DNA of 64,000 bases from Macrostomum lignano (GCA_002269645.1 NIVC01000755.1:1-64000); one strand, 5' to 3'. Shown: positions 43,513 through 58,958, numbered from the stretch's first letter. Numbers and translations: made by a program. Notes: generated by a model not told the origin, from the letters alone.

Positions 43513-46500
43513 TTAACGACACGAGCAGCAGCCCTTCTTTTTCACAGCTGGTTTCGGTTCTTCTTTCCTAAAATCTTTGCCCCAGCCAGGGTAGCCGTGC
43601 ACAGATTCTGGGAGGCCGTCGAACAGAATCAATTTGTTGTCGTTTAGAAATATCTCGGATGCGTTCATGCGGTAGAGGTCTCGAACTGGTGTAGAAGGGA
43701 ATACTTCGACCGGAACTGCGGATAGAGAAGTTAAAAATTGAGTCAGTTGACCAGACAAAAGCCTGAGTACTAAGTACGGTCCGATTAAATGCCTGTTGGT
43801 ATGAAGCGGTTTACTTGCATTGATTGACGGGTTTGGTTTAATTGGCCTGGGTGAGGGGTGTGGTTTCATTGACCTAAGTGACGGGTGTGGTTTAATTGGC
43901 CTGGGTGAAGGGTGTGGTTTAATTGGGCTGGGTGAGGGGTGTGGTTTAATTGGCCTGGGTGAGGGGTGTGGTTTAATTGGCCTGGGTGAGGGGTGTGGTT
44001 TGATTAGCCTGGGCGAGGGGTGTGGTTTAATTGGCCTGGGTGAGGGGTGTGGTTTAATTGGCCTGGGTGAGGGGTGTGGTTTCATTGACCTAAGTGACGG
44101 GTGTGGTTTAATTGGCCTGTGGGAGGGGTGTGGTTTAATTGGCCTGGGTGAGGGGTGTGGTTTAATTGGCCTGGGTGAGGGGTGTGGTTTAATTGGCCTG
44201 GGTGAGGGGTGTGGTTTAATTGGCCTGGGTGAGGGGTGTGGTTTAATTGGCCTGGGTGAGGGGTGTGGTTTCATTGACCTAAGTGACGGGTGTGGTTTAA
44301 TTGGCCTGTGGGAGGGGTGTGGTTTAATTGGCCTGGGCGAGGGGTGTGGTTTAATTGGCCTGGGTGAGGGGTGTGGTTTAATTGGCCTGGGTGAGGGGTG
44401 TGGTTTCATTGACCTAAGAGACGGGTGTGGTTTAATTGGCCTGTGGGAGGGGTGTGGTTTAATTGACCTAAGTGACGGGTGTGGTTTAATTGGCTTGGGT
44501 GAGGGGTGTGGTTTGATTGGGCTGGGTGAGGGGTGTGGTTTAATTGGCCTGGGTGAGGGGTGTGGTTTGATTGGCCTGGGTGAGGGGTGTGGTTTAATTG
44601 GCCTGGGTGAGGGTGTTGTTTTATTGGCCCGTGTGAGGGGTGTGTTTTATTGGCCCGTGTGAGGGCTGTAGTTTAGGTTTGCCTCAGTGAGGGTTCAAAG
44701 ATTACCCACCAATCAGCTGGCTGCTATTCGGTCCACTCTGCCGCTTGTCTCCCAGAAAGCAGCCCACACTGTAGCGAAAATCCGACCTTTTGTCAAGACC
44801 CACGCGAGCGAAAGCAGGATCAATTGCGTCTCGTAGTAAACTGCCATCCTTTACGGACACTGACACGCTGGTAGACCAAACGTCAATGTACTTCGGATTG
44901 TACTTGTGCGACTCCTACATATTAAAGAGGAGGAAATGTGAAGACTGTAATTTAAAATTGAAAACTACGCTCGTAATATCTAGATAGATTTGTATGAGTA
45001 GTGATCTGAAAATAATTACAGTTAGACTGATGATAGTAAAATTACAGAAACGTTGCTTGCAAACTAATAAGGCACTCTCAAATTTATGACAACCTGTGAA
45101 TGAGTCAGCTGGTGGCTGAACGAGTCAGACAGCTTGTGAATTAATCAGACAGATTTTTAATGAGTCAGACAGTGTGTGAATGAGTCAGTCAGTGTGTGAA
45201 TGAGTCAGTCAGTGTGTGAATGAGTCAGTCAGTGTGTGAATGAGTCAGTCAGTGTGTGAATGAGTCAGAAAGTGAATGTAAATGAGTCAAAAATTGTGTG
45301 AATGTGTTAGACAGTGAAGTGAGTGTGAATGAGAATGAGTCAGACAGTGAATGTGAATGAGTCAGACAGTGTTTGAATGAGTCAGACAGTCCACGTGATC
45401 AAGTCAAACAAGGAATCGCATTCCATTAATTTGCTCACTCGAACGTTGGCCCGCCGTTCAATATTATCGGGTTCAGAGGAGCGCAGCTTCTTTCGCTGAG
45501 CTACAAACAGCATCCAACGTGTGGCGGCGAATGTCTTCATTATTCGCAGCTGGAAGCTGAGCCACTCGGGGTAGGCGGCAGAGGTGCTCAGCTCTGAGTC
45601 CGGCCTTTTTCCGCCGTCTTTTATCAGCGAGTTTTTGTGCAGCTGCACAAGGCGCCGGTTGAGGATCTACGGGCAGTTTTTTATCGTAATTTAATGGGAT
45701 CATACTAGAGTGGGATCATTCTAGTTATTATAGGATGAAATAATGCTAGAATTTAATATTTCTAGAACGCGACAATTCTAGGATGGGATAATTCTAGGAT
45801 GGGATAATTCTACGATGGGATAATTCTAGGATGGGATAATTCTACGATGGGATAATTCTAGGATGGGATAATTCTAGGATGGGATAATTCTATATTGAAA
45901 TAGTTCTATATTGAGATATTCTAATTCTAGGATGGGATCATTCTAAGATTGGATGACTCTAAGATTAGGATGGGATAATTCTACCTAGGGTTGAATAATT
46001 CTAGGATGGTATAATTCTAGGTTGGGATAAATCTAGGATGGGATAATTCTAGAATGGGATAATTCTATGTGGGGATAAATCTAGGATGGGATAATTCTAG
46101 GATGGGATAATTTCACGAGGATTTAATGCACACAACAGCAATTTCCAAGGAAATCAGCCACTCACATGGTCCAGCCTGCTTACGCCAACATCCTCCAGCC
46201 TCCGACCTTCAGCGTCCAGCTGCATCGGATGCTGCCGCAGCTTCACGAGTTTGAAATTGTGTCGCACCTGCCGCATGTCGAGCTGCCCGGGCAGGGGGTC
46301 CGCGATGGTCCTGTGGAGCTTAACCGCCGGCTGTAGCTTGATGTTGTAACTGCGCTCAAGGCGCGTCTGACTCTCCGCTGCGGGTTGGATGGGCGCCATT
46401 CTTATTGGCGCCTTAATCTGGCGCCATTATTATTGGCGCTTTAATCTAGCGCCATTTTTCTTCGCGCCTCAATCTGGCGCCATTCTTATTGGCGCTTTAA

Positions 46501-56900: not shown

Positions 56901-58958
56901 TAAGTTAGATCCGTCAACACACCAAATTAGAGCCTTAAACACACCTTGAATTGGAGCCTTAAACACCCTAAATTAGATCCTTCAACACAACAAATTACAG
57001 TCTTAAACACACCCTAAATTAGATCCTTCAACACACCAAATTACAGCCTTAAAACACTTCAAATTGAATCCTAAAACACCCTAAATCGGAGCCTTAAACA
57101 CCAAATTGTAGTCAAACACACCAAATTAGAGCCATAAACAGCCCAAATTAGAGCCATAAACACCCCAAATTGGAGGCCTAAACCCCCCAAATTAGAGCCT
57201 TGAAAACACCTAATTCAAACACCTCGATTAATCCCAGACGCGGAACTCTGGGCAGCAGCGGCTTCAGCGGCTGCAGCGAAGGCTCCGACAGTCGGCAGCA
57301 TCCGCAGGGCGGCGACACGGCCAACACAGCCGAGGCCGTCGACACCGGAGCCGCTTTCTCCAGCGGTGCCGCCACCACCTCGTCTACTTCTGCGAGCAGC
57401 AAGAAGAAGAAGAAAACCGTCGTGTGCGACCCGCGCCACGAGGACAATGCCAACAAGGAGCAGCCGCCAGCGTTTACGTCTCGCTCGCCGCCAGAGCTGG
57501 ACGATCCACTCGGGGATGACGATTTCGATGAGGTTGATTTCGACAGTTCGCCGTCTGCCACTAATCAGAATTTGAGCATTCACGACTGCGACTCTAGCGG
57601 TGAGGGGGTGTGGCTGAGGGGTGATATTGGGGGAGGGTTGTGGCTGAGGGGTGATATTGGGGGAGGGTTGTGGCTGAGGGGTGATATTGGGGGAGGGTTG
57701 TGGCTGAGGGGTGATATTGGGGGAGGGTTGTGGCTGAGGGGTGGTATTGGGGGAGGGTTGTGGCTGAGGGGTGATATTGGGGAGGGTTGTGGCTGAGGGG
57801 TGATATTGGGGAGGGTTGTGGCTGAGGGGTGATATTGGGGAGGGTTGTGGCTGAGGGGTGATATTGGGGGAGGGTTGTGGCTGAGGGGTGATATTGGGTG
57901 GGGGTTGTGGCTGAGGGGTGATATTGGGTGGGGGTTGTGGCTGAGGGGTGATATTGGGGGAGGGTTGTGGCTGAGGGGTGATATTGGGTGGGGGTTGTGG
58001 CTGAGGGGTGATATTGGGTGAGGGTTGTGGCTGAGGGGTGATATTGGGAGAGGGGTTGTGGCTGAGGGGTGGTATTGGGGGAGGGTTGTGGCTGAGGGGT
58101 GATATTGGGGGAGGGTTGTAGCTGAGGGGTGATATTGGGGGAGGGTTGTAGCTGAGGGGTGATATTGGGGGAGGGTTGTGGCTGAGGGGTGATATTGGGG
58201 GAGGGTTGTGGCTGAGGGGTGATATTGGGTGGGGGTTGTGGCTGAGGGGTGATATTGGGTGGGGGTTGTGGCTGAGGGGTGATATTGGGAGAGGGGTTGT
58301 GGCTGAGGGGTGATATTGGGAGAGGGGTTGTGGCTGAGGGGTGATATTGGGGGGTTGTGGCTGAGGGGCGATATTGGCGTGGGGTTGTAGCTGAGGGGTG
58401 ATATTGGGGGAGGGTTGTGGCTGAGGGGTGATATTGGGGGTTGTGGCTGAGGGGTGATTGGCGTGGGGTTGTGGCTGAGGGGTAATATTGGGGGCGGGGG
58501 TGTGGCTGAGGGGTGATGTTGGGGGAGGGTTGTGGCTGAGGGGTGATATTGGGTAGGGGTTGTGGCTGAGGGGTGATATTGGGAGAGGGGTTGTGGCTGA
58601 GAGGTGATATTGGGGGGTTGTGGCTGAGGGGTGATTGGCGTGGGGTTGTGGCTGAGGGGTGATATTGGGGGTAGGGGTGTGACTGAGGGGTGATGTTGGG
58701 GGCGGGGCTGTGGCTGAGGGGTGCTATTGGCGGGGGTGTGGCTGAGAGGTGATATTGGGGGAGGTGTGGCTGAAGGGAGATATTGGGGGAGGGTTGTGGC
58801 TGAAGGGTGATATTGGGGGTTGTGGCTGAGTGAGGTAAAATCGTCGTTGCTTTAAACGTTTCTGGCTCATAACTTTGATCCTTTGAACCTTAGACGAGTC
58901 ACAGGCGACGCTCGAGGAGACGATGTCACCGACAGGAGTTGAGATCGAACAGAACTGA
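50960..58958 (+). CDS. Paralogue B of the same unnamed family (~740 aa, N-terminus uncertain); exons 50960-51150, ~52055/52114-52559, 52642-52677, 52746-52775, 52866-53000, 53799-53998, 54280-54492, 55224-55431, 56334-56667, 57238-57599, 58894-58958
   Basis: From 52559 onward every junction is GT-AG and phase-consistent to TGA at 58956-58958. The core exons are homologous to paralogue A. The exon1-exon2 join needs either the weak acceptor at 52113 or a 1-nt indel. Confidence 0.85.
51190..51960. repeat. 20-bp minisatellite (GGGACGGATCGGAGAGGGCT)
   Basis: Direct periodicity; unit related to the 49955-50545 array. Confidence 0.95.
53010..53770. repeat. (CCTGACA)n heptamer array, intron of paralogue B
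   Basis: Direct periodicity, degenerating toward the 3-prime end. Confidence 0.95.
54003..54117. repeat. (TCTG)n directly after a donor site
   Basis: Tetranucleotide run. Confidence 0.95.
55441..56308. repeat. 15-bp perfect minisatellite (CGGGATCAGGGATAT), ~58 copies
   Basis: No visible mismatches; fills intron 55432-56333. Confidence 0.98.
56680..57225. repeat. Degenerate ~24-bp repeat (TAAACACACCCTAAATTAGAGCCT-like)
   Basis: Recurrent unit within an intron. Confidence 0.8.
57600..58830. repeat. ~30-bp G-rich minisatellite (GGGGTGATATTGGGGGAGGGTTGTGGCTGA), last intron of paralogue B
   Basis: Direct periodicity starting at the donor. Confidence 0.95.

What the first reader, a model, noticed from the sequence alone, without database searches (positions are those of the whole stretch)
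43513..58958. Head-to-head pair of paralogues from a protein family I cannot name
Seen: two divergently transcribed multi-exon genes, mostly hidden from the ORF track by repeat-filled introns, share four consecutive homologous exons with identical intron phases (1,0,0,1). Shared motifs: NF(K/L)xVKxxxHPxQ; YP(E/D)WxxF..RWxxF; KYxPxYxDxWSTS..DPxF..GLDxRxDFR..GCFxGDKR (28/58 identical, ungapped, counted by hand); VPxE..DLYxxNxxEIFxNDN. The N- and C-termini are unrelated low-complexity sequence. Inference: an old inverted duplication that kept a conserved ~250-aa domain and a shared upstream region. I do not recognise the domain as a named family.
Basis: partly seen in the sequence, partly recalled or inferred. 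Interest (0 to 1): 0.75.

Follow-up and report, generated by a model that had tools for sequence, protein, structure and literature searches.

The report
Flatworm orphan gene pair, head-to-head
Two neighbouring, oppositely oriented genes of the flatworm Macrostomum lignano are real but distant copies of each other; they belong to a small unnamed protein family found so far only in this species, whose function is unknown and whose tail end may fold like ubiquitin.

Summary
The window is Macrostomum lignano DNA. Gene A (minus strand, 47557-43513) and gene B (plus strand, 52415-58958) share four consecutive homologous exons. All splice sites are GT-AG and the intron phases are 1,0,0,1 in both. 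BLASTP gives 32% identity over 250 aa (E 3e-32).

Both genes already exist as computer-predicted, uncharacterised UniProt proteins. At least three further B-like loci lie elsewhere in the genome (57-59% identical to B).

No relative outside M. lignano was found:
- Pfam gave no credible hit (best E 0.03, one of four members).
- PDB sequences gave none.
- An exhaustive HMMER profile search of 1.84 billion proteins found five family members only.
- A metagenome scan found none.

The family is therefore an unnamed, lineage-restricted ("orphan") family. That is common in this species.

AlphaFold models are weak (pLDDT 46 and 58.5). For the C-terminal ~100 aa, all 50 listed PDB Foldseek hits are ubiquitin-like beta-grasp domains (Raf/Rgl2 RBD, RA, FERM F1). 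None is significant.

A groups with B, which fits an old local inverted duplication. A evolved about three times faster and lacks B's N-terminal motifs. A shared promoter is not shown. Interest is modest.

The parts
47224..47557 (-). Gene A coding exon 1 (ATG at 47557; low-complexity N-terminus with the remnant motif LTLDFGLQNS). The donor is GTTAGT, phase 1. TTTCAG at 47600-47595 is a possible cis or spliced-leader acceptor.
   Evidence: matches UniProt model P0006
46166..46377 (-). Gene A exon 2 = shared exon 1 (NFKLVKLRQHPMQ)
45439..45666 (-). Gene A exon 3 = shared exon 2 (YPEWLSF...RWMLF)
44737..44914 (-). Gene A exon 4 = shared exon 3 (KYNPKYIDVWSTS...GCFLGDKR). An alternative donor 27 nt downstream (exon end 44710) is also phase 1; public models use both.
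43513..43715 (-). Gene A exon 5 = shared exon 4 (DLYRMNASEIFLNDN). It ends in KKKGCCSCR followed by the stop codon.
49271..49387 (-). Possible extra 5' exon of gene A (MSISELK...FSYD), used only in UniProt model A0A1I8G6M2. Unverified.
47558..52414 (.). Region between the two first confident coding exons. It holds four tandem arrays (47582-48535 17-mer; 48822-49195 21-mer; 49976-50550 and 51202-51954, related 20-mers in direct orientation). No nucleotide-level inverted repeat was found between the two arms. B's reading frame stays open upstream to the ATG at 52220.
52415..52559 (+). Gene B coding exon 1 (MLDLQTNNSRRE motif). The true start may lie upstream (ATG 52220, preceded by TTGCAG at 52171-52176).
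52746..52775 (+). Gene B exon 2 (EVSNENAVAK), 30 nt
52866..53000 (+). Gene B exon 3 (TEIIDTSKLIEEGKV motif, acidic stretch). It is conserved in the B-like paralogues and absent from A.
53799..53998 (+). Gene B exon 4 = shared exon 1 (NFLMVKAHEHPTQ)
54280..54492 (+). Gene B exon 5 = shared exon 2 (YPDWIRF...RWADF)
55224..55431 (+). Gene B exon 6 = shared exon 3 (KYLPAYYDIWSTS...GCFEGDKR); first half of the predicted beta-grasp module
56334..56667 (+). Gene B exon 7 = shared exon 4 (DLYKRNCAEIFVNDN) plus a lysine-rich tail; second half of the predicted beta-grasp module
57238..57599 (+). Gene B exon 8 (low-complexity, acidic C-terminal region)
58894..58958 (+). Gene B exon 9 with the stop codon (DESQATLEETMSPTGVEIEQN*)

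Best explanation
Genes A and B are two intact, divergently oriented protein-coding paralogues. They belong to a small gene family that is so far detectable only in Macrostomum lignano. The family has five paralogue groups: A, B, Mlig011183, Mlig033303 and Mlig026584, each with near-identical extra copies from the partly duplicated genome. The pair most likely arose by an old local inverted duplication. Copy A then evolved about three times faster, lost the N-terminal motif exons, and acquired a polybasic, cysteine-rich C-terminus (KKKGCCSCR). The products have no signal peptide or membrane segment. Each consists of disordered low-complexity ends around a ~250-aa conserved core. My best reading of the core (inferred, weakly supported) is a helical N-terminal half followed by a ~90-aa ubiquitin-like beta-grasp module encoded by shared exons 3 and 4. 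On that reading the proteins would act as intracellular adaptors that bind a partner protein through the beta-grasp face, as RBD, RA and UBL domains do. The lysine-rich stretches (or, in A, a lipid-modifiable cysteine cluster) would set where the protein sits in the cell. Shown here: paralogy, gene structure, and absence of detectable relatives. Inferred: the fold, the adaptor role, and membrane targeting of A.
For: Species and models: B is 100% identical to UniRef A0A1I8I1G5, and A is 94% identical to A0A1I8I075, with the differences at splice-site choices. Paralogy: E 3e-32; four collinear exons; identical intron phases with GT-AG sites throughout; 59 invariant columns across A and three B-type proteins. 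Family size and restriction: searches return M. lignano proteins only. The HMMER profile search of 1.84e9 representatives gave 5 hits, all with E<1e-100, and nothing else at E<=0.001. Pfam gave no credible hit (none at E<=1; weak single-member matches only, best E 0.03). PDB sequence searches gave none. The metagenome scan gave none. Local duplication: A joins B in the tree and shares 12 exclusive residues with it against 1-3 with the others. The intron between shared exons 1 and 2 is present in A and B but absent at the Mlig011183 and Mlig033303 loci. Those two loci have no A-like neighbour within 10 kb upstream. Fold: in the AF2 model of the C-terminal 112 aa (pLDDT 58.5, pTM 0.51, core blocks 62-78), all 50 listed PDB Foldseek hits are beta-grasp domains. 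Examples are Rgl2 RBD (prob 0.75, rmsd 3.2 A over 76 columns) and Raf RBD (0.69, 3.3 A over 78). The viral library gave only heterogeneous noise. hhalign places the beta2-alpha1 segment in the equivalent register of Raf RBD (pairwise P 0.002) and of ubiquitin.
Against: No Foldseek hit is significant (best E 0.41). The models are low-confidence because the alignment has only 4-5 sequences. No Pfam RBD, RA or ubiquitin model matched, even at E<=10. The N-terminal half of the core has no fold assignment at all. No expression evidence was available here. A and B appear in the libraries only as UniRef/WormBase-type predictions, whereas the three other paralogue groups also have NCBI (BOX15_Mlig...) gene models. 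The restriction to M. lignano is limited by what the libraries contain; other Macrostomum species are probably poorly represented.
Confidence: 0.55

Rival explanations
1. The conserved core is a new fold with no relation to ubiquitin-like domains. On this view the beta-grasp hits arise only because a loosely packed small alpha/beta model tends to match a very common fold.
For: All Foldseek E-values are at least 0.41. pLDDT is 46 for the whole core and 58.5 for the tail. The N-terminal beta-hairpin expected for a beta-grasp is not formed in the model; DSSP shows only H29-40, E51-54, H82-87 and E93-96. There is no sequence-profile signal.
Against: All 50 listed PDB hits belong to one superfold, with rmsd about 3 A over 76-80 columns for several RBD and RA domains. 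The independent full-core model also drew many local UBL/FERM-F1 hits. The viral library gave no such coherence.
Confidence: 0.3
2. Gene A is a decaying or already non-functional duplicate of a B-like gene, not a working paralogue.
For: A's branch is about three times longer than B's. A lacks the exons carrying the TEIIDTSKL and LDLQTNN motifs. Only UniRef-sourced predictions of A were found in the libraries, with no NCBI gene model.
Against: A has five exons and 1155 nt of open reading frame with no stop or frameshift, and all its splice sites are GT-AG. It keeps all 59 positions that are invariant in the family alignment. A second genomic copy (A0A1I8G6M2) encodes almost the same protein.
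Confidence: 0.15
3. The family is a fast-evolving orthologue group of a conserved animal RBD-, RA-, DCX- or UBL-containing protein. It would not be a lineage-specific invention; sequence similarity would simply have been lost.
For: The fold-level resemblance to RBD and RA domains. Flatworm proteins are often very divergent (general knowledge).
Against: The profile search of 1.84e9 proteins found nothing outside the family even at E 0.001. The core's N-terminal half and the linear motifs match no known architecture.
Confidence: 0.12
4. The family derives from a mobile element or virus, as some UniRef names suggest ('Reverse transcriptase domain-containing').
For: Only the automatic UniRef names.
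Against: No Pfam RT, integrase or other mobile-element domain was found in any member scanned. The genes are multi-exon with conserved intron positions. Copy number is low. The viral fold library gave only noise.
Confidence: 0.03

Closest known systems
Uncharacterised M. lignano proteins BOX15_Mlig011183g2, BOX15_Mlig033303g1 and BOX15_Mlig026584g3 (UniProt A0A267G645 and relatives)
   Same: They share the ~250-aa core with B at 57-59% identity and with A at about 31%. They carry the same N-terminal motifs as B and have the same intron positions between shared exons 2/3 and 3/4.
   Different: In the two loci examined (Mlig011183, Mlig033303), shared exons 1 and 2 are fused, with no intron, and no A-like gene lies head-to-head within 10 kb upstream. 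None has a described function, and no paper mentions them.
Ras-binding and Ras-association domains (Raf RBD, Rgl2/RalGDS RA) and other ubiquitin-like beta-grasp modules (FERM F1, UBL, PB1)
   Same: The predicted fold of the C-terminal ~90 aa. Foldseek gives prob 0.69-0.75 and rmsd 3.1-3.3 A over 76-79 columns to Rgl2 and Raf RBDs, and all 50 listed hits are beta-grasp. The strand-helix-strand register agrees in hhalign.
   Different: There is no significant sequence or profile similarity. A lysine-rich loop is inserted between strands in the B-type proteins. The model is low-confidence. No GTPase- or ubiquitin-related partner or residue can be inferred.
Head-to-head (bidirectional-promoter) paralogue pairs in animal genomes
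   Same: Divergent orientation of two related genes with nothing convincing encoded between them.
   Different: Classical bidirectional pairs have transcription start sites less than 1 kb apart (general knowledge). Here the first confident coding exons are 4.7-4.9 kb apart, mostly tandem arrays. Start sites are unknown, and trans-splicing is common in this species.

Membership tests
Unnamed Macrostomum lignano family (A, B, Mlig011183, Mlig033303, Mlig026584) | Significant full-core sequence similarity, including the motifs NFxxxK..HPxQ, YPxxxxF..RW, KYxxxxxDxWS, DPxFxxxGLxxRxDF..GCFxxDKR and LYxxNxxEIxxNDN | tested here: met
   BLASTP of A against B gives E 3e-32. The profile search gives E 5e-103 to 3e-165 for all members. 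59 columns are invariant.
Unnamed Macrostomum lignano family (A, B, Mlig011183, Mlig033303, Mlig026584) | Shared intron positions and phases in the core | tested here: met
   A and B have phases 1,0,0,1. The introns between shared exons 2/3 and 3/4 are also present at L001 and L002. The intron between shared exons 1/2 is present only in A and B.
Ubiquitin-like beta-grasp superfold (RBD / RA / UBL / FERM-F1) | Beta-beta-alpha-beta-beta-beta grasp topology in a confident structure | tested here: inconclusive
   The AF2 model has pLDDT 58.5 and an unformed N-terminal hairpin. All 50 listed PDB Foldseek hits are beta-grasp, but the best E is 0.41 and TM (normalised to query) is 0.36-0.47.
Ubiquitin-like beta-grasp superfold (RBD / RA / UBL / FERM-F1) | Match to a sequence model of the family (Pfam RBD, RA or ubiquitin; PDB sequences; profile-profile comparison) | tested here: not met
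   No such Pfam family matched at E<=10. There were no PDB sequence hits.
Ras-binding / Ras-association domains specifically | Binding of a GTP-loaded Ras-family GTPase through the beta2 edge and alpha1 basic residues | not testable with these tools
   This needs a binding assay or a confident complex model.
Families named in the UniRef titles (ULP protease, Aquarius_N, NARG2_C, RRM, reverse transcriptase) | Presence of the named Pfam or PROSITE domain | tested here: not met
   The spliced cores of A and B and the trimmed cores of B, Mlig011183, Mlig033303 and A give no such Pfam hit. The disordered ends outside those cores were not scanned, so a domain confined to them is not excluded. The precomputed Pfam column is '-' for all family members.
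Bidirectional-promoter gene pair | Divergent transcription start sites less than about 1 kb apart, with co-regulation | tested here: inconclusive
   Divergent orientation is met. The first confident coding exons are 4.7-4.9 kb apart, or about 1.6 kb if the unverified 5' exons of public models are used. Start sites and expression cannot be tested here.

The most novel reading that the evidence does not exclude
The ~250-aa core is a domain invented in macrostomid flatworms: an unassigned helical half fused to an extremely diverged or convergent beta-grasp. After a local inverted duplication, copy A was remodelled into a membrane-anchored variant (polybasic stretch plus a CCxC end, with loss of the N-terminal motifs). 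The pair would then be a clean example of birth and neofunctionalisation of a lineage-specific signalling adaptor in a regeneration model.
Probability: 0.25. Interest if true: 0.45.

Novelty: new variant of a known kind. Interest (0 to 1): 0.3.

Why it matters
Only about 47% of M. lignano protein-coding genes have a detectable human homologue, and 38% of its germline-specific genes (PMC8629364). An unnamed family is therefore ordinary for this genome. The value here is narrow. The work gives corrected exon-level models for two poorly annotated genes and shows that their misleading database names are unfounded. It defines a five-member family with a testable fold hypothesis (beta-grasp) and a tidy case of asymmetric divergence after local duplication. 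It would matter more if the family proved to be tied to Macrostomum-specific biology (regeneration, germline, adhesion), which can be tested by RNAi and in situ hybridisation in this model.

Tried and rejected
- Pfam scans of the spliced cores of A and B gave nothing at E<=1. Scans of four trimmed core sequences (B, Mlig011183, Mlig033303, A) at E<=10 gave only single-member noise: BPS1 at 0.03, MobI, MRC1.
- PDB sequence searches with a single sequence and two profiles gave no hits at E<=10.
- Word-indexed searches of 5.8e9 proteins with B, A and the profile returned only M. lignano.
- An exhaustive HMMER profile search of 1.84e9 representatives returned only the five family clusters.
- A scan of JGI metagenome contigs produced 600 pattern matches, none confirmed by tblastn.
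- Foldseek of the whole-core model was meaningless overall (pLDDT 46). Foldseek of the C-terminal model against viral structures gave noise.
- Nucleotide blastn between the two arms found no inverted similarity apart from the 20-mer arrays, so the duplication is too old to show in introns or flanks.
- Exact-sequence contig look-ups for A and the B allele found nothing on record, so conservation of the head-to-head layout in the duplicated genome copy could not be checked.
- Literature searches for gene and accession identifiers returned no papers.
- Rfam and tRNA scans of the window found nothing.
- The public model P0011 (1166 aa) was rejected as a chimera that reads through the antisense strand of gene A. 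P0005 was rejected as a frameshifted prediction of a B-like copy.
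Full report
**What the window is.** The best protein match of the spliced plus-strand gene is 100% identical to a Macrostomum lignano UniRef entry (A0A1I8I1G5). Every other hit is from the same species. The window is therefore genomic DNA of this free-living flatworm. In its published genome, simple and tandem repeats make up 15% of the sequence (PMC5730564).

**Checking the observation.**
The best is 28 identities in 55 ungapped residues.
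- I read the DNA at each border and spliced both genes in a script.
- Gene A (minus strand) has five coding exons: 47557-47224, 46377-46166, 45666-45439, 44914-44737 (or to 44710) and 43715-43513. They encode 384 aa (393 with the longer exon 4).
- Gene B (plus strand) has nine coding exons: 52415-52559, 52746-52775, 52866-53000, 53799-53998, 54280-54492, 55224-55431, 56334-56667, 57238-57599 and 58894-58958.
- All splice sites are GT-AG. The phases around the four shared exons are 1,0,0,1 in both genes.
- BLASTP between the public models gives 32% identity over 250 residues, E 3e-32.

**Both genes are already predicted.** B corresponds to UniRef A0A1I8I1G5 and A0A1I8G7T1. The latter gives the full C-terminal splicing that I adopted. 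A corresponds to A0A1I8I075 and A0A1I8G6M2. Their UniRef titles (ULP protease, Aquarius_N, NARG2_C) and those of relatives (RRM, reverse transcriptase) have no support in the Pfam scans of the conserved cores. No family member carries a precomputed Pfam domain either.

**It is a family, not only a pair.**
- Three further paralogue groups lie on other contigs: Mlig011183, Mlig033303 and Mlig026584. Each has several near-identical copies.
- Within the core, B is 58-59% identical to these groups, they are 70-75% identical to each other, and A is 31-32% identical to all of them.
- B shares N-terminal motifs with them (LDLQTNNS[KR]RE, TEIIDTSKL[IV]EEGKV). A lacks these except for a possible remnant.

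**History of the pair.**
- In a neighbour-joining tree, A attaches to B. A shares 12 residues exclusively with B, against 1-3 with each other paralogue.
- The intron between shared exons 1 and 2 is present in A and B. It is absent at the Mlig011183 and Mlig033303 loci, where the two exons are one block.
- Those two loci have no A-like sequence within 10 kb upstream.
- With no outgroup the tree cannot be rooted. Both possible rootings fit an old local inverted duplication that left A next to B, with A then evolving about three times faster.
- No nucleotide similarity remains outside the exons. The tandem arrays in corresponding introns are unrelated, so they arose after the duplication.

**No detectable relatives elsewhere.**
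- Pfam gave no credible hit. There was nothing at E<=1 for the spliced cores, and only weak single-member matches at E<=10, the best being E 0.03.
- PDB sequences matched nothing at E<=10 with one sequence or two profiles.
- An exhaustive HMMER search of 1.84 billion representative proteins, using a four-sequence core profile, returned five proteins. All have E below 1e-100 and all are family members. Nothing else reached E 0.001.
- A pattern plus tblastn scan of metagenome contigs found none.
- Within the reach of these libraries the family is restricted to M. lignano. The libraries probably hold little from other macrostomids, so the real range may be a genus or order.
- Such orphan status is common here: only about 47% of M. 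lignano protein-coding genes have a detectable human homologue (PMC8629364).

**Fold.**
- With only 4-5 sequences, AlphaFold2 does poorly on the 304-aa core: pLDDT 45.8 and pTM 0.38. Its Foldseek hits are insignificant, although many of the short local ones are ubiquitin-like domains.
- Modelled alone, the C-terminal 112 aa (shared exons 3 and 4) reach pLDDT 58.5 and pTM 0.51, with core blocks at 62-78.
- Against the PDB, all 50 listed matches are beta-grasp domains: ubiquitin variants, Rgl2, Raf and B-Raf RBDs, RalGDS, PLC-epsilon and NORE1 RA domains, ezrin, moesin and myosin-X FERM F1 lobes, RAWUL, PB1, GABARAP and UFM1.
- The best have prob 0.69-0.75 and rmsd about 3.2 A over 76-79 columns. 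The best E-value is only 0.41.
- The viral structure library gave only heterogeneous noise with the same model.
- Profile-profile alignment puts the strand-helix segment TVFAKPETTVLNMVDPVFSKLGL opposite beta2-alpha1 of Raf RBD (pairwise P 0.002, probability 13%) and of ubiquitin (P 0.09).
- I read this as a moderately likely (about 55-60%) but unproven beta-grasp module. The N-terminal half of the core is unassigned; it is predicted as helices plus one strand-helix unit.

**Likely mode of action (inference).** The proteins have no signal peptide or hydrophobic segment. They have long disordered, low-complexity ends and lysine-rich clusters (KKKPKKGE, KKAKKDKKGGK). Gene A ends in KKKGCCSCR. A polybasic stretch next to cysteines is a combination that, in other proteins, supports lipid modification and membrane binding (general knowledge, untested here). 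The most economical mechanism is an intracellular adaptor that binds partners through the beta-grasp face and short linear motifs. A would be a divergent, possibly membrane-attached variant. Nothing here identifies the partner or the tissue.

**Promoter question.**
- The first confident coding exons are 4.7-4.9 kb apart. Four tandem arrays occupy 2.66 kb of that interval.
- One public model of A adds an unverified 5' exon at about 49.3 kb.
- TTTCAG at 47600-47595, 38 nt before A's ATG, fits the [T/C]TNCAG motif reported for M. lignano spliced-leader acceptors. So does TTGCAG at 52171-52176, 44 nt before an upstream in-frame ATG of B (PMC8629364). Both would equally fit ordinary cis acceptors.
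- With 38.8% of genes trans-spliced, start sites cannot be inferred from DNA. A shared bidirectional promoter is neither shown nor excluded.

**Verdict.** The pair is part of a five-member, species-restricted family that is already present in databases as uncharacterised predictions, in a genome where such families abound. The new elements are the corrected gene models, the family definition, the asymmetric divergence of A and a tentative beta-grasp assignment. Interest is modest (0.3).

Noticed in passing
window 43825-44675, 45095-45390, 45756-46112, 46392-46956, 53010-53784, 54003-54116, 55439-56309, 56673-57215, 57605-58819: Almost every intron longer than 250 nt in both genes is filled by its own, unrelated tandem array (units of 4-30 nt). 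In gene B the arrays begin 4-9 nt after the GT donor and, in introns 3, 6, 7 and 8, stop 14-74 nt before the AG. In those four introns 92-97% of the sequence is array and only the splice signals are unique. An ankyrin-repeat gene near 22.3 kb shows the same pattern. I found no paper describing this intron architecture in Macrostomum.
   Followed up: partly
window 52642-52677 (+): A candidate 36-nt in-frame cassette exon (EVQNSNAESQLE) lies inside B intron 1. It is flanked by TTTCAG and GTGAAT and resembles the neighbouring 30-nt exon 2 (EVSNENAVAK). It may be a tandemly duplicated micro-exon. There is no transcript evidence.
   Followed up: no
window 47582-48535: A 17-mer array (56 copies) lies just upstream of gene A. 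Each unit carries a perfect 5' splice-site consensus, CAG|GTGAGT, on the plus strand, that is, antisense to gene A.
   Followed up: no
window 49976-50550 and 51202-51954: The two 20-mer arrays between the genes have related units (17/20 identical after a 1-nt shift). They are in direct, not mirrored, orientation, so the intergenic region is not symmetric around the pair.
   Followed up: partly
window 32369-34409 (+): A fragment of an LTR-type retroelement with a gag zinc knuckle (weak) and an integrase core domain (Pfam rve, E 5e-15). The frames are broken into several ORFs. It was not assembled or analysed further.
   Followed up: partly
window ~22050-25460 (+) and ~1370-1483 (-): Other host genes are present. 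One is an ankyrin-repeat gene whose exons are separated by (TCTA/TCTG)n arrays and which has a polyglutamine-rich tail. The other is an exon encoding the C-terminal part of a potassium-channel-type BTB_2 (T1) domain.
   Followed up: partly
window 62640-63218 (+): The next gene downstream of B encodes a protein with one hydrophobic segment and cysteine runs (…ALFVLMNLTAGLALALCICHCRRNQ…). Two public gene models (P0011, P0005) wrongly fuse this sequence to B-like proteins.
   Followed up: no
UniRef entries A0A1I8I1G5, A0A1I8G7T1, A0A1I8I075, A0A1I8G6M2, A0A1I8GLX2, A0A1I8G1S4: Their automatic names (ULP_PROTEASE, Aquarius_N, NARG2_C, RRM, reverse transcriptase domain-containing) are unsupported: the conserved cores give no such Pfam hit and the precomputed Pfam column is empty for the members listed. 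The names could mislead annotation transfer.
   Followed up: yes
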